A stretch of DNA of 64,000 bases from Octopus sinensis. Lineage: Eukaryota. The translations under genes were made by a program, and so were the position numbers. The stretch lies in contig NC_043003.1 in the NCBI RefSeq assembly GCF_006345805.1, positions 2,976,001-3,040,000 on the forward strand. Reading direction: 5' to 3'. Numbering within the stretch: position 1 is the stretch's first letter; every line of letters starts with the position of its first letter. Below the pieces are notes generated by a model. It made no database searches. It saw only the letters and a list, made by a program, of their open reading frames with translations, and was not told the origin of the DNA. Positions 5,761 through 55,664 of the stretch are shown here, piece by piece.

Positions 5761-5864
5761 GAATCCAGAAAGGTAACAAGGTGTCTTTGTATATGCCGAT
5801 GATTCTCGAACTGGTCATTGCAATGTTGGCTTGCGCTCGGCTCGGAGTTGTTCATTCAATTGTG
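5761..5864 (+). CDS. ACSS2: ACSS exon (phase 1 to 0): [35 protein letters not shown]
   Basis: ttgattgcag|GAATCC...ATTGTG|gtgaga; inside ORF 5718..5984; matches the G.KGD.V.IYMPM..E...AMLACARIG..HSIV segment of Acs enzymes. Confidence 0.95.
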
Positions 5865-15303: not shown

Positions 15304-16887
15304 AGGCGGCAAGCTGGCAGAATCATTAGCACGCTGGGCAAAATGCTTAGTGGTAATTCATCTGTCTTTATGTTCTGTGTTCAAATTCCACCAAGGTTGA
15401 CTTTGCCTTTCATCCTTTCGGAGTTGGTAAATTAAGTACCAGTTGCATACAAGGGTCAATCTAAACGACTGGCCCCCTCCTCAAAAATTTCGGACCTTGT
15501 ACATACAGGACCCTGTAGAGGAGGTGCCTGAGGCTGCTACCTTGATGCTCCTTCCAGGAAAAATGGGTGGTGAATATGGTTGGATGGATTTTAATTTATA
15601 TCACTTTAAGACAGTTTGTATCATAGAAGCAGGGGTGACCATATGTGGGTTGGCGTCAAAAATAATTTTAGCATGCCTTGTAGGTTAGTTTTGGAGGTTC
15701 ACTTCTCATTTATTGTAACAAACTCCAACACAATTGCTGTCATTTCTATTGTTATATTTGTTGTTTTCTCTTTTTTCAAACTTTTCTCTTAAACCTTGAT
15801 CCATCTCAAAATTTTGTTGCCGTTTTTGCAGTTTGCTGGCTATTCAGAAAGAGCCCTTTCTGAGCGATTGATGGGATGTGAAGCCTCTATAATTATTACT
15901 GCAGGTCAGCACTTAAAGCCCACATCATAACACTTATATCAAATCTGTATAACATCTTACAGTTTATATATATTTGATATACCTGCCTAGCTGTTGCATT
16001 TACCCTCCCCCTGTAATTGTTAATTACTTGTTCGTTGTTGTATTTTTATATATAATTGGTTCAGTTTAATTAGTTTTAAATGTTGGTTTTGTTTGGTTGT
16101 GATTTCTTTATTTACTTCACTCTGACAAAATCGTTTCAAACTGAATGAGTTGCTTTGTTTCATTTTCTATAATGCTACTTTATGTTTTTGTATTTTAAAC
16201 TCTCTCACTGCTTCAGGAATGAAATTTTTTATTTGTAATTTTTTACGCGTAATTCTAATTTTTTTAATTTAAAAATAACAGGTAAATGCTGATATTTTAT
16301 TTTATTTTCAAAATGAAAGCAAATATTTTGTTTTTACTATCTTTTGGTTATTTAACTACAGCCATGCTGAGACGCCACCTTCTGGGGTCTTTTGTCAACT
16401 ATATTGATCCTCTCCTCGCAGGATTACTTTATCTGAAAAGCAGCAAGCTGGCAGAATCATTAGCATGCTGGGCGAAATGCTTAGTGGTAATTCGTCTGTC
16501 TTTACATTCTGAGTTCAAATTCCGCTGAGATTGACTTTGCCTTTCATTCTTTCGGAGTTGGTAAATTAAGTACCAGTTGCATACTGAGGTCGATCTAATT
16601 GACTGCCCTGCCCCCCCCCCCCCTAATTTTGAGCCTTGTGCCTAGAGTAGAGAAGAATATCTAATTCTTAGTGCGGCGAACTGGCAGAAACGTTAGCACG
16701 CTGGGCAAAATGCTTAGCAGTATTTCGTCTGTTTTTATGTTCTGAGTTCAAATTCCGCCGAGGTTAACTTTCCCTTTCATCCTTTTGGGGTCGATAATTT
16801 AAGTTCCAATTGCGTACAGGGGTGGATCTGATTGACTGGCCCCCTACCCAAAAATTTCGGGCCCTGTGCCTAGAGTAGAAAAGATTA
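15304..16887 (+). mobile_element. Three copies of SINE family B flanking exon A (about 15304-15510, 16437-16660, 16672-16887). Other copies at about 32811-33020, 34283-34490(-), 37493-37680, 45374-45580, 50180-50355, 59217-59430, 63516-63710
   Basis: Head ggcggcgagctggcagaaacgttagc...gagttcaaattcc; tail gtgcctagagtagaaaag. Confidence 0.85.
15832..15904 (+). CDS. ACSS2: ACSS alternative exon A (73 nt, phase 0 to 1): FAGYSERALSERLMGCEASIIITA
   Basis: ccgtttttgcag|TTTGCTGGC...ACTGCAG|gtcagc; open frame; homologous to the FAGFS.ESL..RI.D....ITAD segment. Confidence 0.85.
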
Positions 16888-17049
16888 TTACTTTATGTGA
16901 GACTTAGTTGATCAGTCTTTTAAAGAAGAATGGCAACGTTGACTTGAGCACAGGTTTTTGAACTGAGAATATAAAAAGAGAAAAGCAAATGCCATAAGAA
17001 ATATTTTATTCAACATTCTGCTGATTCTGCCGAGTCACCTGCAAATTTA

Positions 17050-17085
<36 letters not shown>

Positions 17086-17981
17086 ACACACACATTTGAT
17101 GAATTTCTACACAGCCCCTTTTCTTAAATTTCACTTACAAGTGCTGCAAACTTCAGTGAATTCTTTCGGGAATTCTTCATTCCTTACTCTACACAGACAT
17201 GGACACATTCGTTCATGCACGCACAATATATTCAGAAGATGAGCATCAAAATCTATGGTTGAAAGCATTTGTCTAGGCTGCTATGCGGTGAGATCATATG
17301 TGCAACAATGTGGCTGTTAAGTAAATTTCTTAAAGACAGAGCCTGTATATATATATATATATATATATATAACGTATATAATTAGGGCTTAGTAAAATAA
17401 ATTACTTTGCCACATACTGAAATTTTTAGAAATAGCAGCCAAAAAGTTTTTTTAGCTATTTCCACTACTTTAAGAAAAAGTCTCCCAGATAATGTTTACT
17501 CAAAAATAACTCACGAAGTTTTACCTCCATATCTTCGTGAGTTATTTTTGAGTAAACATTATCTGGGAGACTTTTTCTTAAAGTAGTGGAAATAGCTAAA
17601 AAAAACTTTTTGGCTGCTATTTCTAAAAATTTCAGTAGTGGCAAAGTAATTTATTTTACTAAGCCCTAATTATATAACGTAATATTTTGAATACACCTTA
17701 AATGGTCCTTTTACATACTGAACACTACTGGTGAAATTAATTAATACTAATTGATTTTACCCTTAATTATGGATATATATAATAATATATATATACTACA
17801 AAATTAGAGATGGAGAGAAACATACTTAAATCAATAAAAACAACTATCCGATGATACCAATCATACTTTAATACACCATTACATATGAGTAAAGGCATTA
17901 TATAAAATGAGATATACAGTAATAGTAAAAAGATAAAGAGATATAAGTAAAAAATTTTCAAATATAATATGCAATTAAATC

Positions 17982-18095
17982 AAAACTGACAGCTGTTTCG
18001 GCAGTGAGGGCAGTCATCATACCTCATTTAACTTCTAGCCATAAGGCAGGTATAAATGAGGCATTAACAAGATGCCACGGCCTCTTCAGAGAATT
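17982..18095 (-). ncRNA. Type-I hammerhead motif with long stem II insert and GUC site
   Basis: Minus strand: CUGAAGA (18089-83), GGC...GCC stem II base, GAAA (17999-96), palindromic stem III ACAGCUGU, GUC; stem I AAUUCU/AGUUUU has two U-U mismatches. Confidence 0.6.
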
Positions 18096-20133
18096 AAATT
18101 AAATTTGTTATAATTGTGAAAAATATAATATAACCATATACATATAAATATAAAATATATAAAAAATGTAAAATATAAAAATATAAAAACTTATACCATA
18201 ATGCTACACTTATATAATATAATATCATTGGTACAATAAAGGAAGGTAAACAGAACAAAATAAAACAAAAATATATTCGGTGTATATACTAATATTAATA
18301 AGTACCGATATTATACATATTTGGCTAATAGTTTTTTTTTAAAAAACTAACACATAGGGAGATGAAAAATAATAATTAAAACCCATGGTTCAGTTCATAA
18401 AATTTAAAGCTATGAAAGTTAATAAAATTACTATTAATATAATAATAATAATAATAATAAAATAATAATAATAATAATAGATACAGTTAAGTTAGCACCA
18501 AGTCCATCCTTTCAAGATCGAAATAACTATGAGTTTTAGAAATGCTGATCACTAGGTAAAGACAATTTAGATTAATTCGATGGCTATTGTTTGAAATTTA
18601 ATCACAAAAGAAATTATACGGTTGGTTAGTCACGGAACGCCAATATTCACACACGCATCTACAGATCAATCGCACATACACACATAGTTATATGTATATA
18701 CATACACTTATACACATACATAATCACAAGCAACAACTAGCACATAGATAAAAAAAGGGAAGCAGCTATGCTACCATTTAGTCCTTCAAAATTATAACTG
18801 TGCTTCAAATAACGAAAAAAGAACCACCCATGCATTCATAAAATATTTAATTTAGATATAAATATATTTTTAATATCAATATGTTACTAAGTCAGAAAAT
18901 TATTTCATGGGTAACTTAAAATTTATAACACCGGTTGTTGCATAGTAACATACGGTTGTTAGATTTATCGTAAGTTTGTTATGATTCCAAGTACGCTAAA
19001 TTATAAAATATAAAATATATATTAATTTTATATTATAAATAAATCACTTATTTACTTAATAATTTAATGCCATAATATACCAGTTTAGGCATTAAAAAAT
19101 AGAAGGGGAAGTACTAATGTAAACGCTTATGAGAACATCACAGAAATTTTTAAAAAATTTATATTATAAATACTTAAGGTAAAATGTGAAAAGATAAAAA
19201 GAAGGAGTAAAAACTAAGGAATAAATACGGTTATACACATATTATAAGTACAAACCAGTATATATGTATTCATATATTATTATATTCATATATATATATA
19301 TATATTATCATTATCATTCAACAACCATGTCCCATGCTGGTATGGGTTGGGCGGTTTGACAAGGATTGGATGTGTTCGTGAACTGCATTTAGCTCCAACT
19401 GCCTGTTTTGGCATGGTCTTTATGGCTGGATTCCCTTCCTAACACCAACCACTTTCAAGCGTACTGAGTGCTTTTTTCAAACCACTTGTACCATTGAGGT
19501 TGCCATGTGGCTTGCACAGCTTCAAGCTCAGAGGGTTGGGTTTCATCTATATATATATATAATATTAAAAGATGGATAATGAAGGAACACATGGCAAATT
19601 CACACACAACACATTGACACGCTCTTCTCTTGTCAGTCATTGCCCAAAAACCAGAACAATTTCATGTCTTTGTTCATTTTGGTGGCGTCAGCAGCAAAAG
19701 GCTGCTGGGAATGAGTGAATGTAAAGAACAATAACATTTGTTTCTCTTTTACAATTCATGAGTTTCTGTTAGACGAACCATTTTATTTCTATGAATGCAA
19801 ACTTATACATACACTGTTTATAAACTTTTATTCTTTTTTTATAGTATTGTTGTTAGAATTAATTGTTATATTTTAATGAAAATTTGTCTTCAAAAAAAAA
19901 AATACTTTGCATATTGTCTGCATGTTGTAGCTTCTATGTAGCTTACCTGTAAATGCAAACAATTTATACCTTGTATTTATTAGTGCAGTGTTTCAACTGT
20001 TTTGTAATGGCAATCTCTCGTCTGTCAATGTTGTTTAGGATTCTTTCCACTGCTGTTCATAATCTTCGTCAGAACTTTATATTCCTATTACTAAGGTGTT
20101 GCCAAAAATATCTTTGGAATCAATGTTTGGAAA

Positions 20134-20173
<40 letters not shown>

Positions 20174-20892
20174 AATTCTAATCATTCGAGTGAGATGAAT
20201 TGTTGTTAAATGTGATTTAACAATTTCTTTTTCTGTTTCTCTCTCTTATTTCAAATATAAAAAATGCATTTATTGTCTGTTTTTTATGAATTCAAATATT
20301 TTCTTCTGCTATTAAAACAGTGAAATTTGCATTTTGAGACCAGCCTAATGTTGAAAGAAGGTTCCATTAGATTTGTTTGAAATTTTAATCTTTTGATTCG
20401 GTCTTTAACCTGCTTCAGTAAAATCTAGAGAAGGGTTATTTGTAGGACTTGTGTATAGCAAGATTTTTCACAGCAGATTGGCACCGGCATGCAAGTGGTG
20501 TTCTTCATTCCCTATATTCCAAGAAAACACATCGGGTCATAGGGAATAATTACCTGACTTAAAAACAAACGAGGGTTGGCAACATGAAGGGCCTCTGGCC
20601 GTAGAAAATCTGCCTCAATAAATTCCATACAATCCATTCTAGCAGGTAAAAAATAGACATGACCAATATCTTACAGAAATGGTGAAGTGGTGGAGTTTAC
20701 TGCTTTCCTACCATTATAAAAGTGAGAACTCTCATGAAATAGGTATGCCCCTATCATTGCTTTTCTGTAATGAATTGGGTTTTAAATTGGCAATGCGTTT
20801 TAAAACCCAATTCATTATAGATAAGCAATGATAGGGGCCATCCCTATTTCATGAGTAAACCGTCTAAACCATATTAGTATGGTACTTGTTTA

Positions 20893-21392
20893 CCATAAAT
20901 CCTCGAATATAGTCCGCCCTTGAGTATAATATGCAGGGGATTTTTAGGGGGTTGTATCTCTGAAAAACCTAAACCCTGTGTATAATACGCACCCCTTCTC
21001 TAACTTGAGTCAAGGAGATCTATGTAATGTCCTTAGTTTGTAAAAATGTATATGATAACGTCCTTTATTATTATTGTATATATAACATAATGCAAACGTG
21101 TAGCTTTTTTGTGCATTTTGTTTGCAGAAAATAAAGAAGTAACAGTAATAACGTTTAATAAATGTTGCTTACTGCAAGTTATGGATGATTCTTTTATGAC
21201 TTCATTGCTTTCAGGTATTTTCGTGCCCGACATCACAAAATACATCGGAATAAACATTGCCGGACAGCAAATAGAGACTCGGACATTGCTTAGAAAATAA
21301 TTTCCATTTTTAACCTCGTGTATAATATGCACTAGGGATTTTGACCTTTAAATTTTTGGGGAAAAATGCAGATTATACACAAGGATTTATGG
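20893..21392. mobile_element. 500-bp Tc1/mariner-superfamily (pogo/Tigger-like) MITE
   Basis: TA|CCATAAATCCT...AGGATTTATGG|TA with imperfect ~25-bp TIRs and repeated subterminal gtgtataat motifs. Confidence 0.8.
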
Positions 21393-22631
21393 TATTACAA
21401 AGTTAAGTGGGGCTGTTTTGGTTGTACATGATGGTGCTTCCTTAGCCAAGGATTGAACCTACATTGGATAAATTAGTTAGGTACGACAGCCATTCATTAG
21501 AATAAATTAATTAGGTGTGAGGGCTTTTCATTGGAGACAGATTAATTATCCTTATTAAGTTTTGGATGATTAATTACTAGATTTCTCAAAAAAAAATATA
21601 ATCTGCAACATTCAGGTCAGCTTTGCTAGATTGAGATCAAAACTTATTTTTGCTGTTTCGCTAAAAGCAGAAAAGATTAGTTGAAATTGTTTGAGATCGT
21701 GTGTGTGTCTGTGTGTGTGTGTTTGTGTGCGCACTTTATTATGTATGTGTTATACATAATATTTTTGTGTGATGGTGAATTTTTGATCCATTTTCATTTA
21801 ACTGATTTCTTCTGTTCACAGCCATGGTTTGCTTGGAAAGTCTTGTTCCCATTTCATCTGCCATTTGAACCAGGAATATCATCTATTTTATGAATTATGT
21901 GTGTATGTATGTGTATATATGTATATATATATACACACACACAATTCATAAAATAAATGATATTCATGGTTCAAATATATATATGTATGTATGTATGTAT
22001 GTATATCTATCTCTATATATATATATGTGTATATATCTATCTATCTATCTATCTATATATATCATCATCATCATCATCATCATCGTTTAACGTCCGTTCT
22101 CCATGCTAGCATGGGTTGGACGGTTCGACCGGGGTTCTGGGAAGCCAGAAGGCTGCACCAGGCTCCAGTCTAATCTGGCAATGTTTCTACAGCTGGATGC
22201 CCTTCCTAACGCCAACCACTCCGTGAGTGTAATGGGTGCCTATTACGTGCCACCTGCACAGGTGCCAGGTGAGGCTGGCAACGGCCACGGTCAGATTGGT
22301 GTATTTTATGTGCCACCGGCACGGAAGCCAGTCGAGGCGGTGCTGGCATCGGCCACGAGTCGGATAGTGCTTTTTGCGTACCACCAGACCAGGGATCCTG
22401 GCTGGTTCAATTCGATTTCGATTTCGCTTGCCCCAACATGTCTTCACAAGCAAAGGGGGTTGGCATGGGTGCCTGTCGTACGGTCGCATTGGAGTATTTT
22501 ACGTGCCACGGCCACGAGTCGGATAGTGCTTTTTACGTACCACCAGACCAGGGATCCTGGCTGGTTCAATTCGATCCGACTCGTGGCCGTGGCACGTAAA
22601 TATATATATATATATATATATAATCTATATA

Positions 22632-22669
<38 letters not shown>

Positions 22670-22678
22670 CTATATATC

Positions 22679-22709
<31 letters not shown>

Positions 22710-22820
22710 TATATATATATTATATATATATAATCTATAGAATCTATATATATATATATATATATATAATATTATATATATATATATATCTATATATATA
22801 TATATATAATCTATATATCT

Positions 22821-22851
<31 letters not shown>

Positions 22852-22986
22852 TATATATAATATTAATTAGAGACAAAACCACTATTTTGCAAATCAAACA
22901 AGGAAACACTTAATCAATACATAAAAAAATTTTAATATATATATATATAGTGTGTGTGTGTGTGTGTATATCTATCTAGCTATCTA

Positions 22987-23025
<39 letters not shown>

Positions 23026-23468
23026 AAATATATTATGTGTGTGGTGTGTATTATATATCTCTATGTGTGTGTGTGTATGTGATATATATCTATATGTGTG
23101 TGTGTGTATGTATATATATCTATATGTATTTATATCTATATGTATTTATATGTATGTGTGTATGTATATATATCTATATGTATTTATATGTATGTGTGTA
23201 TGTATATATATCTATATGTATTTATATGTATGTGTGTATGTATATATATCTATATATATATGTGTGTGTATGTATATGTATTATATATATATATTATATA
23301 TGTATATATATATATATAATGGTGTTGTGTGTGTGTGTGTTTATATATATCTATATATATATATATACCGGAGAGTAAAAAACATAAATGTGAAACAAGG
23401 TGGAAAAAAGAGTACTCAAATACCAGTGGTAGAGTAATATGCTTTATTTTAAGCAGCAGAAATTCAAC

Positions 23469-23516
23469 AAAATCTGTTACTCTGAGTTTCTCGTTACCGT
23501 TCATCAGACAGTTTTT
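23469..23516 (-). ncRNA. Minimal type-I hammerhead ribozyme motif (mirror copy, antisense)
   Basis: Reverse-complement copy of the 23523-23570 motif; CUGAUGA at 23507-23501, GAAA at 23490-23487. Confidence 0.7.
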
Positions 23517-23522
23517 GCTAGC

Positions 23523-23570
23523 AAAAACTGTCTGATGAACGGTAACGAGAAACTCAGAGTAACAGATTTT
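23523..23570 (+). ncRNA. Minimal type-I hammerhead ribozyme motif (sense to the ACSS pre-mRNA)
   Basis: Stem I CUGU(23528-31)/ACAG(23562-65); CUGAUGA 23532-38; stem II A-CG-GUAA-CG-A; GAAA 23549-52; near-palindromic stem III ACUC-A-GAGU; GUA cleavage triplet 23559-61. Confidence 0.7.
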
Positions 23571-24620
23571 GTTGAATTTTCTGCTGCTTAAAATAAGTAT
23601 ATATATATATATATATAATATATATGTATGTATATATATATGTATGTATATATATATGTATGTATATATATAGGTATGTATATATATATGTATGTATATA
23701 TATATGTATGTATATATATATGTATGTATATATATATATGTATGTATATAGTATGTATGTATATATATGTATGTATGTTATATATGTATGTATATTATAT
23801 ATATATATGTATGGATATATATATATGTATGTATATATATATATATGTATGTATATGTATGTATATATGTTATGTATGTATATATGTATATGTATGTATA
23901 TATGTATATGTATGTATATATATATGTATGTTATAATATATGTATGATATATATTAATATGTAGTATGTATATATATGTATGTATATATATATAATGTCT
24001 GTATATATATATTGTATGTATATGTATGTATGTATTATATGTATGTATATATATATATGTATGGTATATAATATATAATGTATGTATAATATATAGTTAG
24101 TATATATGTATAGATATATATGTATGTATATGTATGTATTATATATATTGTATGTATATATATATATGTATATATTTCCTGAGCGCCATACTAATACAAT
24201 TGTTCGTTTGTTTTCCACCTGCCTTCGTCTTTTGTTTATTTTCATAAAGCTTCCCGTTATATATATATATATGGTGTGTGTGTGTGCGTGTGTGTGTATA
24301 TATACACAGTATATATATGTATACACACACACACACACACATATATGTATATGCGTATATATATACATATATATATGTATATGTGTATATACACACATAA
24401 TTATTTTTTATGTTTCTGTATTTTCAGTATTGCTTCTCTTGTTTATTTCTTCCCTTGTAGCACAATCAATCTTTTACCATTTCTTCAGCCTTCTTGGAAC
24501 ATTTTCTCACAATAATTTTCTCCACTCGAAAGACACATTGTTTGCATCCTCCCATCAACATGTCCCCCCTTTTTTTTTATATTGTATTACATTACATTAT
24601 GTTATATTATATGGGCATGG

Positions 24621-25072
24621 ACACATTGAAACTCCGATGTCTGGCAGCTGACTTGGCAGACACCCATAAAATTATCAACCATCGTACAAACAATAACTCT
24701 GAGTATCTTTTCAAACTCCACCTGTCTAACACCCGTGGACACATTTACAAAGTCAGAAAACAGCACAGCTCCCATGACTTCAGGAAACATTTTTTCCCAC
24801 TAAGAGTTGCTGAAGCATGGAACAGATTGCCAGCATCAGCTGTTAGTTGTCGGAGCACTGCATCCTTCAAAACTTCCATGCTTCCTGAGATTCGCCAACA
24901 CTACACCTGATTTTCTCCCCTCCATACACACGCAAGCATGTATCTGACTCATACACTGTTCACTTTCCAGACATTTCTACATTACTGCATATACATTATG
25001 TGCTTTTGACAAGTTGTGGTGCACCTGAGCACTGTATACAATAATTTCATTATTATATATTATTATTATATT
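24621..25072 (+). mobile_element. CR1-clade LINE 3' end
   Basis: ORF 24494..24910: TRGH.YK......DFRKHFF..RV...WNRLP......FK; followed by a 3' UTR and (TTA)n-like tail. Confidence 0.85.
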
Positions 25073-25510
25073 CAGCTTTTTATGTATTTAATTAAAGAGG
25101 TAAGTACCACGCCCCTAGACTAATGAGTTCATTCATTAATACGTGTGGGGAAGAAACAGGGGCTAAATTTGTGGGTTTGAAATCCAGTAGGGCTGTGAGG
25201 GGGGGAAGTGAAATTGGGCTTTAGGTTGACTTAGGACATGTTTGAACAATCAGAAATCATTAGAATAGACACAGAGAGAGGAAACCGGGGATCTGGGACC
25301 CAGGGGCTGCAGTGTATCGGTGAGTGAGTGTTGACCAGTCAGCTAGATGAGGTGGGGTGTTTGCAGTGTTGCCTCAGATATTGAGTAATATGGGACCCTA
25401 ATGGAGCAGCAGGGACCGAGCAAATGATGATGACTGAGACACTTTCAGATCCTGAAGAGGAAGTTTAACCTTTGGGATATAGTTTCCACCTTCTAATGGA
25501 TGGACAGATG

Positions 25511-25543
<33 letters not shown>

Positions 25544-26288
25544 TTAACATCCATTTTTCCATACTGGCATGGGTTGGACGGTTCAACTGGGGTCTGGCAA
25601 GCCAGATGGCTGCACCTGGCTCCAGTCTTGATCTGGCAGAGTTTCTACAGCTGGATGCCCTCCCTAACGCCAACCACTCTGAGAGTGCATTGGGTGCCTT
25701 TTACGTGCCACCGGCACGAGGGCCAGTTAGGCGGAACTGGCATCGACCATGCTTGAATGGTGCTTTTTATGTGCCTCTGGCACGGGAGCCAGTCAGGTGG
25801 CACTGGCAATTTATATACATGATGTGATAAAGAATTTGAGAGTTTTAGTTGTGTATTTTCATGTATTAATGGAGTGTTACTTTGGGAAATTCATTTTTAT
25901 TATCTTTTAACGTGTCTTCCATACTGGCATCGGCTGGACTGTTCAACACGATTCACCAAGTGGCAAGACTGCATCAGGCTCTGTTTTGGTGCTAATTAAA
26001 AAAAGTTGTTTTTATTTCCACTGTGAAGAATTACCTGTGTGAAATCTTCTTTACCTTACCTTTGAGATATGTTTGTTTGACACCATCTCTGGCATTTCTT
26101 CCTATGTTATTTATCTGTAATGCATGCTCATGTCAGTACAGTTTTCCATTCCTGCATTTCTTGACCAATACCCATTCTTTGAAACCTGACTGTTTTTTGT
26201 TTAGAATTGCTATGAAAACAACATCTCAAACTCACTTGTTTGTCTCTGAGCCATTCTTTCATCACATTGTTTATAGAAATCTACATTA

Positions 26289-26690
26289 AGGTGGCGAGCT
26301 GGCAGAAATGTTAGTACACCGGGTGAAATGCGTAGCCATATTTCGTCTGTTGCTACGTTCTGAGTTCAAATTCTGCCGAGGTCGACTTTGCCTTTCATCC
26401 TTTCAGGGTCGATTAAATAAGTACTAGTTACGCACTGGGGTCAATATAATCGACTTAATCCGTGTGTCTGTCCTTGTTTGTCCTCTCTGTGTTTAGCCCC
26501 TTGTGGGTAGTAAAGAAATAGTTATTTTGTCTGTCTTTACGTTCTGAGTTCAAATTCCACCGAGGTCAACTTTGCCTTTCATCCTTTTGGGGGAGTCGAT
26601 AAACTAAGTACCAGTTGTGCACTGGGATCGATCTATTCGACTGGCTTCCTGCCCCAAAATTTTCGGGCCTTGTGCCTAGAGTAGAAAATA
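26289..26690 (+). mobile_element. Dimeric SINE family B element
   Basis: Full head plus body 1 (...gtagtaaagaaatag), then a second 5'-truncated unit with a different tail. Confidence 0.8.
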
Positions 26691-26956
26691 TACAAAACTA
26701 CATCACATCTTAATCATTTTTGCCTTGGGTCTGGTGAAGCTAACAGGGAAATAGGACTCAAATCACGAGTATCTACCTGTCTATTATTAAATAATCAGCA
26801 AAAGTCACAGAGTGACTTAAGGGCCGAGAGTTTCATGCATTGGCTTGTGTCAAAACTTAGCTTAATAATTTATGTCGGAAAGAAATATAACAAGTTATTT
26901 TAAAGGAATGGTTATTCATATTTTACCTTTGAAAGTTCCAATCAGATTGTTTGAAA

Positions 26957-27343
26957 TCATCATCATCATCATCATTTAGCGTCCGCTTTCCATGCTAGCA
27001 TGGGTTGGACGGTTCAACTGGGGTCTGTGAAGCCAGGAGGCTGCACCAGGCCCAGTCTGATCTGGCAGTGTTTCTACGGCTGGATGCCCTTCCTAACGCC
27101 AACCACTCCGTGAGTGTAGTGGGTGCTTTTTACATGCCACCCACACAGGTGCCAGACGGAGCTGGCAAACGGCCACGGACGGATGGTGCCTTTTACGTGC
27201 CACCGGCACGGGGGCCAGGCGAGTCTGGCAATGCCCACGATCGGATGGTGCTTTTTTCTTTGCCGGTGGCACGTAAAAAGCACCCACTACACTCACGGAG
27301 TGGTTGGCGTTAGGAAGGGCATCCAGCCGTAGAAACACTGCCA
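26957..27343 (-). mobile_element. Young RTE 3' end with an adjoining inverted partial copy
   Basis: (CAT)n start; 27265-27343 is the reverse complement of 27063-27141. Confidence 0.9.
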
Positions 27344-27485
27344 AATACTTTGGAAAAATTACTAACGTTATGAATTTTTAGCATTTTGTGTCATGTGATT
27401 TTTTTTCATGCCATAATTAATTAGGTTTAAATTAATGAAGATTTTAGTTAAACATTGTTTTTATTTTGCAACCATTTTCTTGTAG

Positions 27486-27558
27486 TTTGCTGGATTTTCC
27501 GCAGAGGCATTAACAAATAGAATCCTTGATGCCAAGTGCTGTGCAATTGTGACTGCAG
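27486..27558 (+). CDS. ACSS2: ACSS alternative exon B (73 nt, phase 0 to 1): FAGFSAEALTNRILDAKCCAIVTA
   Basis: ccattttcttgtag|TTTGCTGGA...ACTGCAG|gtgatt; open frame; closer to the canonical Acs sequence than exon A. Confidence 0.9.
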
Positions 27559-29946
27559 GTGATTCTTAGAGTGCTCTTTGTTGCTTTGCGTCTTCACACT
27601 AACTGCTTGGTGCTCTCTTTACACTAAAATCCGAACCAACAAAATCTGCACAACTCATCTGATGTTTTTGTTTCTAAATTTTTCAATGTCAAATTCTTAA
27701 CAGAAACGATTCTTTAAAAACTAATATCATTTAGAACTGTACAATAGCCACAGAAAGCATTTACAAACACACACGTGAGTCTATACATATAAGTGTATAC
27801 ACTTATAGATTCTCAATACCTGCATGTATGTGTATATGTGCATTTCATAAATGCATACATGTATTTGAGTGTGTATGTGCATACATAGAAAGCACATTCA
27901 CATCTACACATACACACACATATCTATATTAATTAATAATTAAAGGAAGTAAAAGCAGTACCAGCATGCTAAATATAGCAGTCAAAATGCTTGTTAGTAC
28001 CCTTAATTATTAATTGATAAATTTTTTACCGTTATGGGTTTTTTTTCCACATGCTAAGCCACTGGTATTATTATAGACATTATTATAATGGGTGTCACAA
28101 GGCTTTGATTGGCCCAAGGCTATAGCAGAAGACACTTGCCCAAAGTGGCACAGAGTAGGACTGAACCTGAAACCATGTGGGTTGGGAAGTAACCTTCTTA
28201 CCACACAGCCACACTATCACTTACATGATATCCTCCTATATATTTATATATAGATGTATTATTTTTGCTTGTGCATAGCATTACTAATAACCTGGTGTTA
28301 GAATTCAGTATGCATATGCTCCAGAACAAAACATCAGTCAAGTACAGAGCAGAGTAATATGGAATTAAAATGACAAGGAACTTTTATAGCATATTGTAGC
28401 AGAAACTGCTGTAAGCTACTGAAATGCATGGCATAATTATTTATTTCTTTGTCATTTTAGTTTCTTATGTGTGTGTGTGTGTGTGTGCATGCATGTATAT
28501 ATGCATGCATGTATGTATATGCATGCATGTGTTAATGCGTATCTATACACGTGTGTATGTATCTATTAACCCTTTAGTGTTCAGATTACTCTGTTAAATG
28601 CAATATTTTTTCACTCAAATTGTTTTTAATTAATCCTGCATTATCTTATAGCTTTGAGGTTTCAGTGATGTGATTGTTTATTTTTAGAATGTCAATGTAG
28701 GTTAGGTGTGAGAGGCCAGATATGGCTGGTTTAAACACTAAAGGGTTAAGTAACATAAGTTTATAAATTAATTCTATATTACACTAATTGCCAAACTTAC
28801 ACCACCAGAAAGTTTTCTTCTGGATATTAACCAATACAGAAATGGTCTGAAGCAGCATGAGTGATTGTGTTTAATTCTTAACGAGCATCCTAATTAGAAA
28901 CACTCTAGCCATAATCATCCAATCTCAACGTTTTTAATCTATCTAGGACCATATTAATCGTGTTGCTTTTTGTTTTGTTTTTTAAGACATTAAGGTGTGA
29001 TTTGAGGGAGATTTAGCTGCTATTTGCTGCTGGTTGAATGACTATGTTGAGGTTCCGTTGCTGGGTTAAAAATGGTTTTTAACTGCACTGAAGCTATATG
29101 GGACTCCACGGTTCCTTCGCTTAATAAAACTTGCATGTTTTCTCTTAATCTTGAAACCGTTTTATTACTAGAAATATTCTTGTATTTCTATTTGTATAAA
29201 TATATGTATTTGTGCGTCTGTGTGTGCATATATGTATTTGTCTCTGTGTGTATACAAATGTATGTATATCATCATCATCATCATCATCATCGTTTAATGC
29301 CAGTTTTCCTTGCTGGCATGGGTTGGACAGTTTGACGGGAGGTGGCCAGCTGAAGAGCTTCCCAGGCCCCGTGTCTGTTTTGGCGTGGTTTCTGTAGATG
29401 GATGCCCTTCCTAATGCCAACCACCTTATACAGTTTACTGATTGCTTTTACGCAGCACCAACACAGGTGCTTATTACATGTCTTCAGTGCCCACGAGCCT
29501 GCAAGGTTAGGGTTGTTTAGCTGAAGAGAGATGCAGGGGACATAGCTGGATGCAAGAACAACCGTGATTTTGCTTAGCTTGGTGTGTCTTCTCAAGCACA
29601 GCAGACTGCCTGAAGTTTCAGTCCCCTGTCATCCTCTCTGTGAGGCCCAACGTCAGAAGATCCTTTCCCTCCATATATGTGTGCATATAGAGTGTTAGGT
29701 GTGGTGTACAGAATTGAATATCGAGAAAAAAAGTTGTCAGAATTTTGGGAAAAAAATTCTTTTATTTCTTAAAAAAACAAAACAAAAACAGAAACAATGT
29801 TCTCTTCTAACCCCCCCCCCCCCAAAAAAAATCTGTTTTATATAAATGAACAAGCTGTTTGTGCATTCACAAAATTGTATTTGACGAATTCTAGAGAGGA
29901 ACGAAAGCGATAATAATAATGAAGAAATAAAAGGATTTTTTCCCAA

Positions 29947-46213: not shown

Positions 46214-46289
46214 ATGGCATGTGGAGAGGAACAAAATTAATAAACTTGAAGAATATTGCTGATGAAGCCATCAAACGTTGCAAGGAAAA
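46214..46289 (+). CDS. ACSS2: ACSS exon (phase 1 to 2): (D)GMWRGTKLINLKNIADEAIKRCKE(N)
   Basis: tttgctttcag|ATGGC...GGAAAA|gtaagg; G from exon A or B plus AT gives the conserved Asp. Confidence 0.93.
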
Positions 46290-46666: not shown

Positions 46667-46787
46667 TGGCTACAATATTGATCATTGCATTGTTGTGCGC
46701 CACCTGAGTCCGAATCCGAATGAGCTGAGGAACGGAAACAGTTGTACTCAGCAAATTCCTGCGAAACGCCCGTGTTATGATCTGAAA
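46667..46787 (+). CDS. ACSS2: ACSS exon (phase 2 to 0): GYNIDHCIVVRHLSPNPNELRNGNSCTQQIPAKRPCYDLK
   Basis: poly-T gtgcag|TGGC...CTGAAA|gtaagt; CIVV.HL plus the ACSS2-type insert. Confidence 0.92.
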
Positions 46788-47006
46788 GTAAGTTAATGTT
46801 GGTTTCTTTGTTTTTTGCTCAAAAAAATGAACCTTCGGTGCTGATTCCGGATTCTTTATTATCCAGACTTTACGGTCATCCTTTACGGTATATACCTTTA
46901 TTTGATCACGTATGTTTTTATATTTCTCTAAAAAAATTCAATATTTGTTTCTAAAAAATTGTTAATTTTAAGCATTCCAATGTCAATTTTGTTTTGTTTT
47001 CAACAG

Positions 47007-47134
47007 ATTAATTGGGACAGTTCTCGTGACAAATGGTGGCATGACTTAATGTCGACCAAAACGGATGAAGAATCAAAGAAATGTCCCCCAGTCTGGTGTG
47101 ATGCTGAAGATCCTCTTTTTATGTTATACACGAG
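47007..47134 (+). CDS. ACSS2: ACSS exon (phase 0 to 2): INWDSSRDKWWHDLMSTKTDEESKKCPPVWCDAEDPLFMLYT(S)
   Basis: ttttcaacag|ATT...ACGAG|gtagag; WWH.L and DAEDPLF.LYT motifs. Confidence 0.95.
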
Positions 47135-47241
47135 GTAGAGAAAACATTTTATACAGTTCTATATTTAAGGGATGAGGAATTATGGCCATTATTTACATTA
47201 TTTACATTTGACGGATATTTGTCCTCATCTTGTTTGTTGTT

Positions 47242-47280
47242 AACACAACATTTCGGCTGATATACCCTTCATCAGGTGCC
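47242..47280 (-). ncRNA. Degenerate hammerhead motif
   Basis: Minus strand: GCAC-CUGAUGA-AGGGUAUAUCAGCC-GAAA-UGU-U-GUGU; stem I intact, stem II broken. Confidence 0.4.
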
Positions 47281-47510
47281 TTGAGGAAATTTTGAACTTG
47301 GGTTCTCATTCCTAGGTATTTTTCAATGTTATTATTATTATAACATCGAAAAATACCTTAGGAATGAGAACACACACATACAGACACACACACACACGTG
47401 CACTCTCTCTCACTTTCTCCCCATTCCTCACCCTCTTATACTACCTTATATCTCTCCCCACCCCTACACACTCAATAATACTATAAAAAGAGACAAAATT
47501 CCTGAAAAAG

Positions 47511-47552
47511 TTCAATCTGACGACTCCACTAGAGTGGACGCAAGCGCTGATA
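47511..47552 (+). ncRNA. Hammerhead relic with core mutations
   Basis: CUGACGA 47517-23; UCCAC-UAGA-GUGGA stem II; GCAA instead of GAAA; palindromic AGCGCU; G at position 17. Confidence 0.4.
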
Positions 47553-47631
47553 TATGATTTATAAAAACATGTGACATATTAATAAATATCTGTAAATATA
47601 AAACCATCCAGATTTCTGAGTACCTCATTTC

Positions 47632-47675
<44 letters not shown>

Positions 47676-47990
47676 TGGTTATAAATTGATAGATATAAAT
47701 GTTTGTTTTTATTTTGAGTTATAATAAAAGCAGTTTAACATTAAAATTGAGAATTACTCATTTTTTGTTTTAGAGTACACATTGTACTTTTACATGATGA
47801 AAAGTGTGACAATGACTTGAGTATTTCAAGCTGCCAGCCTTCATCAGGCAGCATGATGAAGGCTAACAGGTCAAAACTTCAAAGTCACTTTCAACCCTCG
47901 TTTTGTAAAAGTATGACATATTTATGTGTGTGTGTGTGTGTTATATATGACGTGTTTATTTTTTAAATTTTCTTTCACTTTCTCATTTAG

Positions 47991-48183
47991 TGGATCTACG
48001 GGAAAACCAAAAGGTGTCCTCCATACGACCGGCGGCTACATGTTATATGCTTACACTACATTCAAGTATGTCTTTGACTATCATGACGACGATGTGTTCT
48101 GGTGTACTGCTGATATTGGCTGGATCACAGGCCATAGTTATGTCTGCTACGGACCCTTGGTTAATGGATCAACAAGTGTGATT
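47991..48183 (+). CDS. ACSS2: ACSS exon (phase 2 to 0): [64 protein letters not shown]
   Basis: tctcatttag|TGGA...GTGATT|gtgagc; AMP-binding P-loop; ORF 47926..48192. Confidence 0.97.
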
Positions 48184-49146
48184 GTGAGCTGATATTTCTC
48201 TTTATAAACAACACACAGAGACAGACAGACAGACACACACACACACACACACACACATCTGTTTCTTGAACTTTGTCTAATGAAGATCTGAAATTACATA
48301 TTTTATTGAGAAGTCATAGAACATGGGTGAAGCTGAGTGGCCAAGTAGTTAGGGTGTTGCACTCGTGATCAGAATATCGTAGTTTCAATTCCTGAACTGG
48401 GCAGTACATTGTACTCTTAAGCAAGACACTTCGTTTCACATTGTTCCAGTCCACTCAATTGCAAATGAGTGACCCCTGTAATGGATTGGTGCCCCATTCT
48501 GAGTGGGGTGGGGATGTGATTTCAATGATTTATATGTCATGGGAACTGGGTAACTGACCCCTTTGAGTTACAGGTCTTGAGACAGTCATGTCCAGGGGTT
48601 GATTATGATGTTCATGTATCTGACCCTTATTGCTTTTAACTCCTTTTTCAAGCATGGCACAAACAAGCGTTCCCTTGATGTCTTCATCCAAGACCTTTCC
48701 TTCCAGGTGTGTTCACCTCTTTCTTACAATACCTCTACAGAAGGTGTTTGTTTGTTGTCTTTTTACCTTGGTTTATGAATTCCAGCTCAGCACCATCCTT
48801 GTTGTGCTTCATACTGCTTTATGGAGCCTGCAATCTCTCAACTTATTTATTTCCAAAACTACCTTGTTATTTTATCTTCTGTTGTTCCCTTAAACAGTTT
48901 TCAACATGAAGTCATACACGTGGATCATGTTTAGTCCCTGGATATTCGAAATCCTTTTTAAACAGGTTGGGTCAATTATTTTAAGAATTAAGTGAAACAC
49001 ACAGGCAATGTATTTCATTAGAAATACGCTTCGGAAATGGTTAAAACAGCTCCAATAAATGTCGCATTCACTTGTTTTACTGATTTATTTCGCTTTTCTC
49101 ATTATTCCGGTAACCGTATTCACTTCATTTTATTTTTCTGCAACAG

Positions 49147-49280
49147 TTTGAAGGAGTCCCATATTATCCAACTGCTGGACGTTACTGGGAGATTGTGGAA
49201 AAATATAAAGTTTCCAAATTCTATACTGCCCCCACTGCTATTAGATGTCTGATGAAATATGGAGACGAATTTGTCAATAA
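49147..49280 (+). CDS. ACSS2: ACSS exon (phase 0 to 2): [44 protein letters not shown](N)
   Basis: ctgcaacag|TTTGAA...AATAA|gtaaga; FEG.P and FYTAPTAIR motifs. Confidence 0.95.
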
Positions 49281-50666
49281 GTAAGATATCCCAGTTTCTT
49301 ATTTAAACATTGCATTAGAACTGTGTTGTGTTTCAATCCACTGGAATCAGTTGTGGTGTATTTAGTAAATTCCTTAAACTCTTTGGCATTCAGATTATTC
49401 TGACGAATATTTTGCTTATTTATTCACATTGTTTTGCAGTTAATCATGCATTATCCTTTAGTTTCAAGAATTTGATTGATTTATTGTATATTGTTAGAAT
49501 GATATTGTAGGGTTGGTGTGATAGGCCAAATCTGGCCAGTTTGAACATAAAACAAATGCAATATTTTGGCTAATTATAACTGATGTCTTGAAGAAAAGAG
49601 TTACTAAGAAAAGAGTTGGTTTCAGAATCATTAGATTAAGGAGAAAGGGATAATCTTTGATAGGGTTTATAATTACAAATGGTGATGATAGGACTTTGAC
49701 AAACCTTAATGATTGCCTGGCACAACAATTAATCAAGACATTTGATTAGTTAATTCGTTAAGTGTTTGAGCAATTGGGAAATGAAAATAAGAAGTGAAAT
49801 AGAATCAGTGTGTGTGTTTATTATTAGCATAATGACCCTCCCAAAATATAACAATAAAAAGGGGCAGCATTTTACAAACTCCTACAAACATAATGGAGAC
49901 ACATTTGAAACCAAAATAAACACATTTAAATTTAATTTAATATAGTTTTAAAATGGTGGCAGAAAAAGTGCAGGAATAAAGTTGGTTTGAAGTGAATGTA
50001 TTTTCAAACAGGATAAATAAATATTTAGTTGTGCGTAAAATAATTTAATAAAGGCCTTGGGTATGTGTTAACGAAAGGTTACGACCAGATGAATATCTCT
50101 GAAATTTATTTAATCCATATTTAATTATTTTAATTTCTGTTTTCTGTGCCAACTGAGCTTTTTGTCTGCCATTATTTGAAATGCTTAGCAGTATTTCACT
50201 GGTTGCTACGTTCTGAGTTCAAATTCTGCTGAGGTTGACTTTGCCTTTCACCCTTTCGGGGTCGATAAATAAAGTACCAGTCAAGTAACGGGGTCGATGT
50301 TATCGATTTAACTCATCCTCCAATACGCCAGACCTTGTGCCTTTAGTAGAAAGCATTATTTGGGCAGTTTAAGGCAAAAACTACGTCTTAAGGAAAATGC
50401 AGAAACATAGCCAGAGTTGTCTCCCGTTCGTTGTTAAAAACTAAAAATTCAAATGATTGACTAATTATATTTTGCTGCATAATTTTATTCACCTTCAGCT
50501 TTTCAAAGTTGTTTGTATCCAATATTGTGTCATAATAATATTGAAAGTTACGATTGTAAGAGCTGATTAATTAATTCGTTTTAACCACTATCATTTTTTA
50601 CTATCATTTGCAAAAATAAAAAAGAAAATGGTGAAACCAACTTTTTTTCTCATCGATTCTTTTTAG

Positions 50667-50799
50667 TCATGATGTGAGTTCCCTGAAGGTCCTGGGTAGC
50701 GTTGGTGAACCTATCAATCCTGAGGCTTGGTTGTGGTACCACAATGTGGTTGGGAAAGGAAAATGTGCTGTTGTTGACACTTTCTGGCAAACGGAAACG
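50667..50799 (+). CDS. ACSS2: ACSS exon (phase 2 to 0): [44 protein letters not shown]
   Basis: tctttttag|TCAT...GAAACG|gtaagt; ORF 50674..50880. Confidence 0.97.
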
Positions 50800-55500: not shown

Positions 55501-55664
55501 TGGGCCCGTCAGATCCTGACAAACTGTCCGACCCATGCCAGCATGGAATATGGAAATTAAATGATGGTGATGAGGCTGATGTTCATTTACACTCATCACA
55601 TGATGTCAATGTAAGGGTACCCATGGATGCACACACACACACACACATGCATATATATATATAT

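What the first reader, a model, noticed from the sequence alone, without database searches (positions are those of the whole stretch)
15832..27558. Duplicated, apparently mutually exclusive 73-nt exons in acetyl-CoA synthetase
Seen: exon A (15832-15904, FAGYSERALSERLMGCEASIIITA) and exon B (27486-27558, FAGFSAEALTNRILDAKCCAIVTA) have the same length and phases (0 to 1). Both begin TTTGCTGG and end ACTGCAG, both are stop-free, and they share 10/24 residues. The flanking exons exist only once. A+B together gives a TAG at 27518-20; skipping both gives a TAA at 46238-40, so only A-or-B yields protein. Knowledge: this is the classic architecture of duplication-derived mutually exclusive exons policed by NMD. 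From recollection of bacterial Acs structures, the FGG/FAG segment borders the CoA site (to be verified on a model). Inference: two Acs isoenzymes are made from one gene. A is the divergent form (F to Y in FAG[F]S, loss of the usual Asp in RI.D), possibly with different CoA affinity or tissue use. I do not know whether this has been reported in molluscs.
Basis: partly seen in the sequence, partly recalled or inferred. Interest (0 to 1): 0.9.

Follow-up and report, generated by a model that had tools for sequence, protein, structure and literature searches.

The report
Mutually exclusive exons in octopus ACSS2
The octopus gene for cytosolic acetyl-CoA synthetase holds two alternative copies of one 73-base exon, and each mRNA uses only one, giving two enzyme variants. 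The pair is real and already listed in RefSeq, and I find the same arrangement across molluscs.

Summary
The window lies in Octopus sinensis chromosome C7 and holds exons 3-16 of the cytosolic acetyl-CoA synthetase (ACSS2-type) gene.

- **The pair.** Exon 4 exists twice, as 4A (15832-15904) and 4B (27486-27558). Both are 73 nt, AG/GT-flanked and phase 0 to 1. Including both, or neither, creates a premature stop.
- **Already annotated.** My two spliced models equal RefSeq XP_029638821.1 (A) and XP_029638820.1 (B) letter for letter. This is not a new discovery at annotation level, but I found no paper describing it.
- **4A is not a dead exon.** It differs at only 4 of 24 residues between octopus and cuttlefish while synonymous sites are saturated. 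Intronless cuttlefish RNA-seq contigs from 11 runs carry 4A, and contigs from other runs carry 4B.
- **Wider distribution.** The order exon 3, variant exon, canonical exon, exon 5 also occurs in Argonauta, abalone, a clam, Lottia and a chiton. In Lottia and the chiton no retrieved protein carried the variant exon. A brachiopod and an oyster lack it. The pair is therefore probably ancestral to molluscs.
- **Structure.** The exon starts at the Phe that touches the CoA adenine. That Phe is kept, while the canonical Asp and Cys are lost in 4A.
- **Not shown.** Functional difference, NMD policing and tissue use remain inferred.

This is an ordinary kind of feature and a moderately interesting instance.

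The parts
5761..5864 (+). Constant exon 3 of the ACSS2-type gene (..[35 protein letters not shown]), ending in phase 0. Exons 1 and 2 lie upstream of the window, at -13985..-13684 and -2332..-2241.
   Evidence: acceptor ttgattgcag|, donor |gtgaga
15832..15904 (+). Exon 4A, the variant alternative exon: 73 nt, FAGYSERALSERLMGCEASIIITA, residues 167-190 of isoform X2 (XP_029638821.1).
   Evidence: conserved in Obim, Ahia and Apha; dN/dS about 0.06-0.3 where dS is defined
27486..27558 (+). Exon 4B, the canonical alternative exon: 73 nt, FAGFSAEALTNRILDAKCCAIVTA, residues 167-190 of isoform X1 (XP_029638820.1).
27518..27520 (+). TAG reached if 4A and 4B are both included. This premature stop lies far upstream of 12 further exon junctions.
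   Evidence: codons counted
27559..27620 (+). Intronic block just downstream of exon 4B, conserved between Octopus and Argonauta; the first ~22 nt also align in cuttlefish. It is a candidate splicing-regulatory element of unknown function.
   Evidence: the Octopus-Argonauta blastn match spans 27460-27620 and the Octopus-cuttlefish match 27468-27580. Exon 4A's conserved flank is only about 20 nt.
46214..46289 (+). Constant exon 5 (DGMWRGTKLINLKNIADEAIKRCKE). It contains R195, the equivalent of the CoA-phosphate Arg191 of S. enterica Acs.
46238..46240 (+). TAA reached if both alternative exons are skipped.
   Evidence: codons counted
46667..61789 (+). Constant exons 6-16: 46667-46787, 47007-47134, 47991-48183, 49147-49280, 50667-50799, 52152-52208, 53472-53555, 54708-54816, 56903-57102, 59561-59606, 61584-61789 (stop TGA).
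   Evidence: The assembled 685-aa products are identical to the RefSeq proteins.

Best explanation
One Octopus sinensis gene for nucleocytosolic acetate-CoA ligase (ACSS2 type, 16 coding exons, about 76 kb) carries a tandem-duplicated exon 4.

**Splicing.** Each mature mRNA includes either 4A or 4B. The exon is 73 nt long, so double inclusion or double skipping shifts the frame into an early stop. Only single-inclusion mRNAs encode the 685-aa enzyme. Aberrant mRNAs are presumably removed by nonsense-mediated decay; that step is inferred.

**Protein.** The swapped cassette is residues 167-190. In the AlphaFold model of the A form it covers the end of a beta strand, the F-A/G-G-F/Y-S loop, a helix (172-181), a short loop and the next strand (186-190). 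Its first residue is the Phe that packs on the adenine of CoA.
- Both versions keep the residues that never vary in the family: F167, G169, S171, R178.
- 4A replaces the otherwise invariant Asp181 (to Gly) and Cys184 (to Ala), and alters the helix face.
- Both products should therefore be active acetyl-CoA synthetases. They may differ in CoA-site kinetics, stability or regulation; this is inferred.

**Evolution.** The pair is old. It predates the octopus-cuttlefish split and most probably arose once in early molluscs. The variant copy always lies upstream of the canonical one. The pair is absent from the oyster locus examined.

**Exon choice.** Which exon is used is probably regulated by sample or tissue. 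The factor is unknown, and a conserved intronic block after 4B is the only candidate element.
For: **Shown**
- Both exons have intact splice sites, equal length and equal phase, and the frame consequences are as stated.
- The spliced products are identical to XP_029638821.1 and XP_029638820.1.
- Both isoforms score above the TIGR02188 AcsA cut-off: 925.7 and 932.8 bits against 724.95.
- Isoform pairs differing only inside this 24-residue window occur in three Octopus species and five other molluscs.
- Cuttlefish intronless RNA-seq contigs carry A in 11 runs and B in 8 other runs. Their CDS differ only at nt 532-604 plus one SNP.
- The order e3, A, B, e5, with 73-nt AG/GT exons, is seen in eight genomes: O. 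sinensis, O. bimaculoides, Argonauta, Acanthosepion, Haliotis, Ruditapes, Lottia and Liolophura.
- No second copy exists in Lingula or Magallana.
- Exon A is under purifying selection. Octopus against cuttlefish shows 13.5 differences over 18 synonymous sites but only 4.5 over 54 nonsynonymous sites. dN/dS is 0.11 for Octopus-Argonauta.
- Exon A is 20/24 identical between octopus and cuttlefish, against 17/24 for B.
- Shared variant-type states are Gly15, Ala18 and Glu11-Arg12-Leu13.
- In the ML tree the variant exons of cephalopods, gastropods and the chiton form one group with support 84/87.
- Octopus F167 aligns to S. enterica Acs F163. F163 lies 3.3 A from the CoA adenine, and Arg191 binds the CoA phosphates.
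- The AF2 model of the A-type protein is confident: mean pLDDT 87, and 81-91 across the cassette.
- F167, G169, S171 and R178 are invariant in an alignment holding both exon types.
Against: - I found no Octopus RNA fragment carrying exon 4A. The fragment search gave only distant hits. For Octopus itself, use of 4A rests on RefSeq and ENA gene models whose supporting evidence I could not inspect.
- NMD of the A+B and skipped forms was not tested.
- No kinetic or structural data distinguish the two isoenzymes.
- With only 24 columns the tree is weak. The AU test rejects neither one clade of all variant exons (p 0.28) nor a cephalopod-only duplication (p 0.31). The bivalve variant exons fall outside the main variant group.
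- The non-overlap of runs with A and B contigs could partly reflect how the assembler resolves isoforms rather than biology. The tissues of those runs are unknown.
Confidence: 0.85

Rival explanations
1. Exon 4A is a decaying pseudo-exon, or a poison or decoy exon. On this reading its inclusion only serves to down-regulate the gene and no 4A protein matters.
For: 4A departs from residues invariant in canonical exons, namely Asp15, Cys18 and Glu7. No Octopus RNA fragment with 4A was retrieved. Its donor GTCAGC is weaker than the consensus.
Against: 4A alone keeps the frame open and gives a full-length protein above the AcsA cut-off. Synonymous sites are saturated while only 4 of 24 residues differ between octopus and cuttlefish. 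Full-length 4A mRNA contigs occur in 11 cuttlefish runs. The exon length, splice sites and open frame are kept in eight genomes spanning four mollusc classes.
Confidence: 0.04
2. The two exons are an assembly artefact, for example a collapsed or duplicated haplotype, or a mis-join.
For: None beyond the general possibility. The introns are long and repeat-rich.
Against: The copies share only 40/73 bases. The same order and spacing logic recur in seven other independent assemblies. Separate mRNAs contain each copy.
Confidence: 0.01
3. The pairs seen in cephalopods, gastropods, bivalves and chitons arose by several independent tandem duplications of exon 4, that is recurrent origin rather than one ancestral molluscan event.
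For: Bivalve variant exons are closer to canonical exons (Ruditapes A against its own B, 14/24) and fall outside the main variant group. The AU test does not reject a cephalopod-only duplication (p 0.31). The distribution is patchy: no pair was seen in oyster, nor in the annotated proteins of mussels, scallops, heterobranchs, unionids or Dreissena. In the chiton a local tandem array shows that this spot is duplication-prone.
Against: The variant copy is upstream in all eight genomes. Octopus 4A is closer to Lottia's variant exon (14/24) than to any canonical exon (at most 13/24; 10/24 to its own B). It shares the G-C-x-A motif at positions 15-18 with Lottia. Haliotis A matches cuttlefish A at 13/24 but its own B at 7/24. 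Variant exons of three classes group together in the tree.
Confidence: 0.2
4. Mutual exclusion is enforced by a dedicated mechanism and not merely by the frame. Candidates are competing intronic RNA pairings (docking site and selectors), splice-site incompatibility, or steric hindrance.
For: A roughly 60-nt intronic block after exon 4B is conserved between Octopus and Argonauta, and its first ~22 nt also in cuttlefish. Something must bias exon choice if usage differs between samples.
Against: No conserved intronic blocks exist next to exon 3 or exon 5 that could act as docking sites. The best RNA duplex partners of the exon flanks fall at unrelated positions in the four cephalopods. All four splice sites are GT-AG of ordinary type. 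The A-to-B intron is 11,581 nt, far too long for steric hindrance.
Confidence: 0.15

Closest known systems
Tandem-duplicated mutually exclusive exon pairs in metabolic and signalling genes, for example vertebrate pyruvate kinase PKM exons 9/10, FGFR2 IIIb/IIIc and SNAP25 5a/5b (from my own knowledge)
   Same: There are two adjacent homologous exons of equal length and phase. One is chosen per mRNA, and the length is not a multiple of three, so joint inclusion or skipping breaks the frame. A compact structural cassette is swapped next to a ligand site while the rest of the enzyme stays constant. Both copies are under purifying selection.
   Different: The gene differs (ACSS2) and so does the clade (molluscs). 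The regulators are unknown here, whereas PKM choice is known to depend on hnRNP and PTB factors. No functional difference between the isoenzymes has been measured. The introns around the pair are very long, 10-19 kb.
Canonical ACSS2/AcsA acetate-CoA ligases: human ACSS2 and S. enterica Acs (PDB 1PG3/1PG4, 2P2F)
   Same: The architecture is the same: ACAS_N, AMP-binding and AMP-binding_C. Both isoforms score above the TIGR02188 cut-off. The match to solved Acs structures has E = 4.5e-231. F163 and R191 equivalents are present.
   Different: Every non-mollusc ACSS2 protein or isoform set I inspected shows a single version of this segment, and the one non-mollusc locus I scanned (Lingula) has a single exon. 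That covers vertebrates, arthropods, amphioxus, echinoderms, a brachiopod and a nemertean. The 4A cassette lacks the Asp (SeAcs D177) that is invariant in all canonical sequences examined.
Dscam1-type, 14-3-3-type and MRP1-type exon clusters controlled by docking-site and selector RNA pairing (from my own knowledge)
   Same: Both involve tandem exon duplicates used one at a time.
   Different: There are only two copies here. No conserved docking or selector elements or conserved complementary partners were found.

Membership tests
Acetate-CoA ligase, AcsA/ACSS2 type (NCBIfam TIGR02188) | Whole-protein score above the curated equivalog cut-off (724.95 bits) | tested here: met
   Isoform A scores 925.7 bits and isoform B 932.8 bits. 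The propionate-CoA and acetoacetate-CoA ligase models stay below their cut-offs.
Acetate-CoA ligase, AcsA/ACSS2 type (NCBIfam TIGR02188) | Domain architecture ACAS_N (PF16177) + AMP-binding (PF00501) + AMP-binding_C (PF13193) | tested here: met
   Precomputed Pfam hits for the cluster that holds both O. sinensis isoforms.
Acetate-CoA ligase, AcsA/ACSS2 type (NCBIfam TIGR02188) | CoA-pocket residues equivalent to S. enterica F163 (adenine contact) and R191 (phosphates) | tested here: met
   A gapless alignment puts octopus F167 on F163 and R195 on R191. Their roles come from PMC6122825 and PMC10455477. F167 is kept in both 4A and 4B.
Acetate-CoA ligase, AcsA/ACSS2 type (NCBIfam TIGR02188) | Catalysis of acetate + ATP + CoA to acetyl-CoA by each isoform | not testable with these tools
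   This needs a recombinant enzyme assay.
Mutually exclusive exon pair from tandem exon duplication | Adjacent homologous exons of the same length and the same start and end phase, each with its own usable splice sites | tested here: met
   Each is 73 nt, phase 0 to 1 and AG/GT-flanked, with 10/24 aa identity. No other such window exists in the 40-kb interval.
Mutually exclusive exon pair from tandem exon duplication | Mature transcripts carry exactly one of the two | tested here: inconclusive
   Met in cuttlefish: intronless mRNA contigs carry A or B and are otherwise identical. In the gene models of eight mollusc species, isoform pairs differ only in this window. For O. sinensis itself only RefSeq models were available, no reads. 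Transcripts with both or neither exon would not have been found by my protein-based look-ups.
Mutually exclusive exon pair from tandem exon duplication | Joint inclusion or joint skipping is non-productive | tested here: met
   A+B gives TAG at 27518-27520 and skipping gives TAA at 46238-46240. Degradation by NMD was not tested.
Mutually exclusive exon pair from tandem exon duplication | Both copies are maintained by selection | tested here: met
   dN/dS is 0.06-0.33 for A and 0.07-0.39 for B among four cephalopods. Both are intact in eight genomes.
RNA-pairing-controlled exon clusters (docking site and selector sequences) | Conserved intronic docking site with complementary selector next to each variant exon | tested here: not met
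   The only conserved intronic block is the one after 4B. Duplex partners are not conserved in position across the four cephalopods. Weak or short pairings could have been missed.
Mutual exclusion by spliceosome incompatibility (U2/U12) or steric hindrance | One U12-type splice-site pair, or an intron between the two exons too short to splice | tested here: not met
   The donors are GTCAGC and GTGATT and the acceptors are pyrimidine-rich ..AG. The intervening intron is 11,581 nt.

The most novel reading that the evidence does not exclude
The exon-4A/4B switch is an isoenzyme switch more than 500 million years old and ancestral to Mollusca. It has been kept in cephalopods, several gastropod lineages, some bivalves and chitons, and lost elsewhere. 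On this reading it retunes the CoA-nucleotide side of nucleocytosolic acetyl-CoA synthetase in a tissue- or stage-specific way, for example separating acetate use for lipid synthesis from acetate recycling for protein and histone acetylation.
Probability: 0.25. Interest if true: 0.55.

Novelty: new member of a known kind. Interest (0 to 1): 0.4.

Why it matters
ACSS2 makes nucleocytosolic acetyl-CoA from acetate. In mammals it links metabolism to lipid synthesis and histone acetylation (from my own knowledge).

A conserved exon switch beside the CoA pocket would be a natural experiment on how this enzyme can be tuned without changing its catalytic core. It would also show that molluscs make two isoenzymes by splicing; I saw no such second form in the other animals examined.

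In practical terms:
- RefSeq's two O. sinensis isoforms reflect a real, selected feature.
- Lottia and the chiton Liolophura carry a variant exon that none of the proteins I retrieved for them contains.
- Expression studies in molluscs that count this gene as one transcript merge two enzymes.

The kind of feature, a duplicated mutually exclusive exon, is well known. The value lies in the instance and its age, not in a new principle.

Tried and rejected
1. **Direct Octopus transcript evidence.** I searched the 5.8-billion-protein collection with a 125-aa fragment spanning exons 3, 4A, 5 and 6. The best hits were 58% identical or less and came from other animals or bacteria; none was from Octopus.
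2. **Docking and selector RNA pairing.** I ran RNAduplex of the 70-nt flanks of 4A and 4B against the whole exon 3 to exon 5 interval in four cephalopods. The top partners fall at unrelated positions, probably in repeats. No conserved blocks lie next to exons 3 or 5.
3. **A third exon copy.** None was found with permissive tblastn in four cephalopods or in the window scan.
4. **Tissue identity of the cuttlefish runs.** A full-text search for the SRR series found only unrelated papers.
5. **Literature on ACSS2 or acetyl-CoA synthetase mutually exclusive exons, and on such exons in cephalopods or molluscs.** Nothing relevant turned up.
6. **The primary structural paper on S. enterica Acs.** It could not be read, so I used two open papers that cite its contacts.
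7. **Patella vulgata genomic locus.** It is not on record, so Lottia served for patellogastropods.
8. **Nested genes in the long introns.** Only repeat-derived and low-complexity ORFs were found.
9. **F-to-Y as a mark of the variant exon.** Rejected, because canonical exons of many molluscs also have Tyr.
10. **Exon-4 isoforms outside molluscs.** The annotated isoform sets of shrimps, crayfish, crab, scorpions, amphioxus, crinoids and a nemertean all carry one exon-4 sequence.


Full report
**1. The observation**

- Exon A (15832-15904) and exon B (27486-27558) are each 73 nt.
- Both start TTTGCTGG and end ACTGCAG. Each follows a pyrimidine-rich tract ending in AG and is followed by GT.
- They translate to FAGYSERALSERLMGCEASIIITA and FAGFSAEALTNRILDAKCCAIVTA. 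They share 10/24 residues and 40/73 bases.
- The upstream exon ends at 5864 in phase 0. The downstream exon starts at 46214 and completes an Asp codon with the leftover G.
- Joining both exons gives TAG at 27518-27520. Joining neither gives TAA at 46238-46240.
- As a chance control I scored all 40,278 forward-frame 24-residue windows between exons 3 and 5 against exon B. Exon A, at 10 identities, is the only window above 8. Only 42 windows in the interval are AG|73 nt open|GT.

**2. The gene**

- The window is G000:C7:2976001-3040000 of a 2.72-Gb genome.
- Compact Acs copies found elsewhere in the assembly served as protein guides. With 60 kb fetched upstream of the window, I built a 16-exon model. 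Exons 1 and 2 lie 14 kb and 2.3 kb upstream of the window, and exons 3-16 lie inside it.
- The two 685-aa products are identical, letter for letter, to XP_029638821.1 (isoform X2, exon A) and XP_029638820.1 (isoform X1, exon B) of Octopus sinensis.
- The recorded chromosome length of 117,540,060 bp equals that of C7.
- Both isoforms pass the curated cut-off of the AcsA equivalog model, at 925.7 and 932.8 bits against 724.95. They match solved Acs structures at E = 4.5e-231.
- The gene is therefore the cytosolic ACSS2-type acetate-CoA ligase. The two-isoform structure is already in RefSeq.

**3. Is exon A used and maintained?**

- The same isoform pair is annotated in O. bimaculoides and O. vulgaris. 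An A-type protein is annotated in Argonauta hians.
- In a cuttlefish cluster (Acanthosepion pharaonis and a close relative, 689/696 identical) the collection holds proteins called on Logan assemblies of RNA-seq runs.
  - The contigs are 2.6-3.2 kb, intronless and full length.
  - An A-type product (FAGYSEKALYERLTGCQASIIITA) comes from 11 runs. The B-type product of the same species comes from 8 other runs.
  - The two coding sequences differ only at nt 532-604, which is exon 4, plus one SNP.
  - The run lists do not overlap, although both include members of the series SRR82816xx and the neighbours SRR5319793/SRR5319794. This hints at sample-dependent choice. I could not learn the tissues.
- Genomic loci of O. 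bimaculoides, Argonauta and Acanthosepion all show e3, A, B, e5 with intact 73-nt exons.
- Between octopus and cuttlefish, exon A differs at 13.5 of 18 synonymous sites but only 4.5 of 54 nonsynonymous sites.
- dN/dS is 0.11 for Octopus-Argonauta and 0.06 for O. bimaculoides-cuttlefish. These values are as low as for exon B.
- At protein level A is 20/24 identical between octopus and cuttlefish, and B is 17/24.
- A dead pseudo-exon and a mis-assembly are both excluded.
- Caveat: I found no Octopus RNA fragment with exon A. For Octopus itself, usage rests on gene models.

**4. Beyond cephalopods**

- A full-length search and cluster look-ups showed isoform pairs that differ only in this 24-residue window. 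They occur in:
  - Patella vulgata
  - Haliotis rubra and H. rufescens
  - Gigantopelta aegis
  - Ruditapes philippinarum
  - Mya arenaria
- Genomic loci show the variant exon upstream of the canonical one in Haliotis and Ruditapes.
- The loci also revealed a variant exon that no retrieved protein carried in two further species:
  - Lottia gigantea, L044:3331-3403, FAGYSVNSLVERILGCLAKVIIIA
  - the chiton Liolophura sinensis, L041:12993-13065, FGGYSQSSLADRVLGAEALCLVLA
- The brachiopod Lingula and the oyster Magallana gigas have short introns here and no second copy.
- Annotated isoforms of crustaceans, scorpions, amphioxus, crinoids, a nemertean, heterobranch snails, unionids and Dreissena show one exon-4 sequence.
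- Canonical exons keep Glu7, Asp15, Cys18 and Thr23 almost without exception. Variant exons tend to Glu11-Arg12-Leu13, Gly15 (6 of 11) and Ala18 (8 of 11).
- Octopus A is closer to Lottia's variant exon (14/24, sharing G-C-x-A at positions 15-18) than to any canonical exon.
- An ML tree of the 24 columns puts the variant exons of cephalopods, gastropods and the chiton in one group (84/87), with the bivalve variants outside.
- The AU test rejects neither an all-variant clade (p 0.28) nor a cephalopod-only duplication (p 0.31).
- Taking the constant upstream position in 8 of 8 genomes together with these results, one origin in early molluscs followed by losses is the more economical reading. I put it at roughly 0.7, against 0.2 for recurrent duplication.

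**5. What the cassette is in the protein**

- A gapless alignment places octopus F167 on S. enterica Acs F163, so exon 4 corresponds to SeAcs 163-186. R195 in constant exon 5 falls on R191.
- F163 lies 3.3 A from N6 of the CoA adenine in 1PG3 (PMC6122825).
- An AlphaFold2 model of the A-type O. bimaculoides protein (one residue different in the cassette) has mean pLDDT 87. It shows strand 162-167, loop, helix 172-181, loop and strand 186-190, with pLDDT 81-91 over the cassette against 94-97 just before it.
- F167, G169, S171 and R178 are invariant in an alignment that mixes both exon types.
- The switch thus keeps the CoA-contact Phe and the family-invariant residues. It changes the helix and its C-terminal cap (Asp181 to Gly) and the following loop (Cys184 to Ala).
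- Whether this alters CoA affinity, stability, oligomerisation or regulation cannot be told from sequence.

**6. How exclusivity is achieved**

- What the sequence shows is the frame rule.
- The intron between A and B is 11,581 nt, which excludes steric hindrance. All sites are ordinary GT-AG, which excludes U2/U12 incompatibility.
- Between Octopus and Argonauta the only conserved intronic sequence in the 40-kb interval is a roughly 60-nt block directly after exon B (27559-27620). Its first ~22 nt are also conserved in cuttlefish.
- Nothing is conserved next to exons 3 or 5 that could serve as a docking site. The best duplex partners of the exon flanks are not conserved in position.
- I therefore take regulated splice-site choice by unknown factors, backed by decay of out-of-frame products, as the working model. 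Both steps are inferred.

**7. Comparison and novelty**

- In kind, this is a classic tandem-duplicated mutually exclusive exon pair. The best conceptual parallel is PKM exons 9/10, a metabolic enzyme whose alternative cassette borders a ligand site (from my own knowledge).
- It is a full member of the AcsA/ACSS2 family.
- It does not meet the defining features of RNA-pairing-controlled clusters, U2/U12 incompatibility or steric hindrance.
- The isoforms are already in RefSeq, and three literature searches found no description.
- What appears new is:
  - the phylogenetic depth, covering four mollusc classes
  - the constant exon order
  - the hallmark substitutions
  - the variant exons in Lottia and the chiton that no retrieved protein contains
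- I rate it a new member of a known kind, with interest 0.4.

Noticed in passing
G000 contigs C9497:713-717 kb (L003, L005, L010), C8699 (L004), C2502 (L001), C11402 (L002), C8697 (L006, L008), C13276 (L007, L009): Three further Acs paralogues, each on two contigs (98%, 91% and 99.9% identical), have GT..AG introns of only 26-27 nt at the same positions and phases as the octopus introns around exon 4. Each has a single exon 4. Such mini-introns fit a dicyemid kidney parasite: Dicyema japonicum was collected from O. sinensis and has a mean intron of 38 bp and 36.7% GC (PMC6736024). These unplaced contigs are probably parasite DNA in the octopus assembly.
   Followed up: partly
L041:12240-13065 (chiton Liolophura sinensis, ACSS2 intron 3): An 87-nt unit is repeated about nine times in tandem. 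It consists of the end of the intron, with pyrimidine tract and AG, plus the first 38 nt or so of the variant exon. Only the last copy continues into a complete 73-nt exon with a GT donor.
   Followed up: partly
L044:3331-3403 (Lottia gigantea): An intact 73-nt variant exon (FAGYSVNSLVERILGCLAKVIIIA) lies between exon 3 and the canonical exon. The only Lottia protein I retrieved lacks it.
   Followed up: yes
window 27559-27620: A roughly 60-nt intronic block directly after exon 4B is conserved between Octopus and Argonauta, and its first ~22 nt also in cuttlefish. It contains GTGCTC, TTGCTT and TGC(G/A)T, plus a CACTAAC motif that is conserved in the octopods only. Its function is unknown.
   Followed up: partly
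window 5865-46213 compared with L038:11118-28351: The interval from exon 3 to exon 5 is 40.3 kb in O. sinensis but 17.2 kb in O. bimaculoides. The extra sequence is repeat-rich, with many short dispersed repeats matching within the interval and a long (TA)n/(TATG)n-like low-complexity stretch at about 22.8-24.4 kb.
   Followed up: no
P0020 (Pinctada imbricata, 807 aa), P0026 and P0061 (Timema), P0019 (Acipenser): These over-long ACSS2 gene models contain tandem repeats of other exon segments. In Pinctada the SLKVLGTVGEPIN...WQTET segment appears three times, with intron read-through. These may be annotation or assembly artefacts, or further tandem exon duplications in this gene.
   Followed up: no
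(cuttlefish RNA-seq runs): Full-length A-type contigs come from SRR8281661/74/76, SRR19578107/10/12, SRR5319793 and others. B-type contigs of the same species come from SRR8281664/77/80/82/84/93, SRR5319794 and SRR9970007. The two lists do not overlap, which suggests sample-specific isoform dominance. The tissues are unknown.
   Followed up: partly
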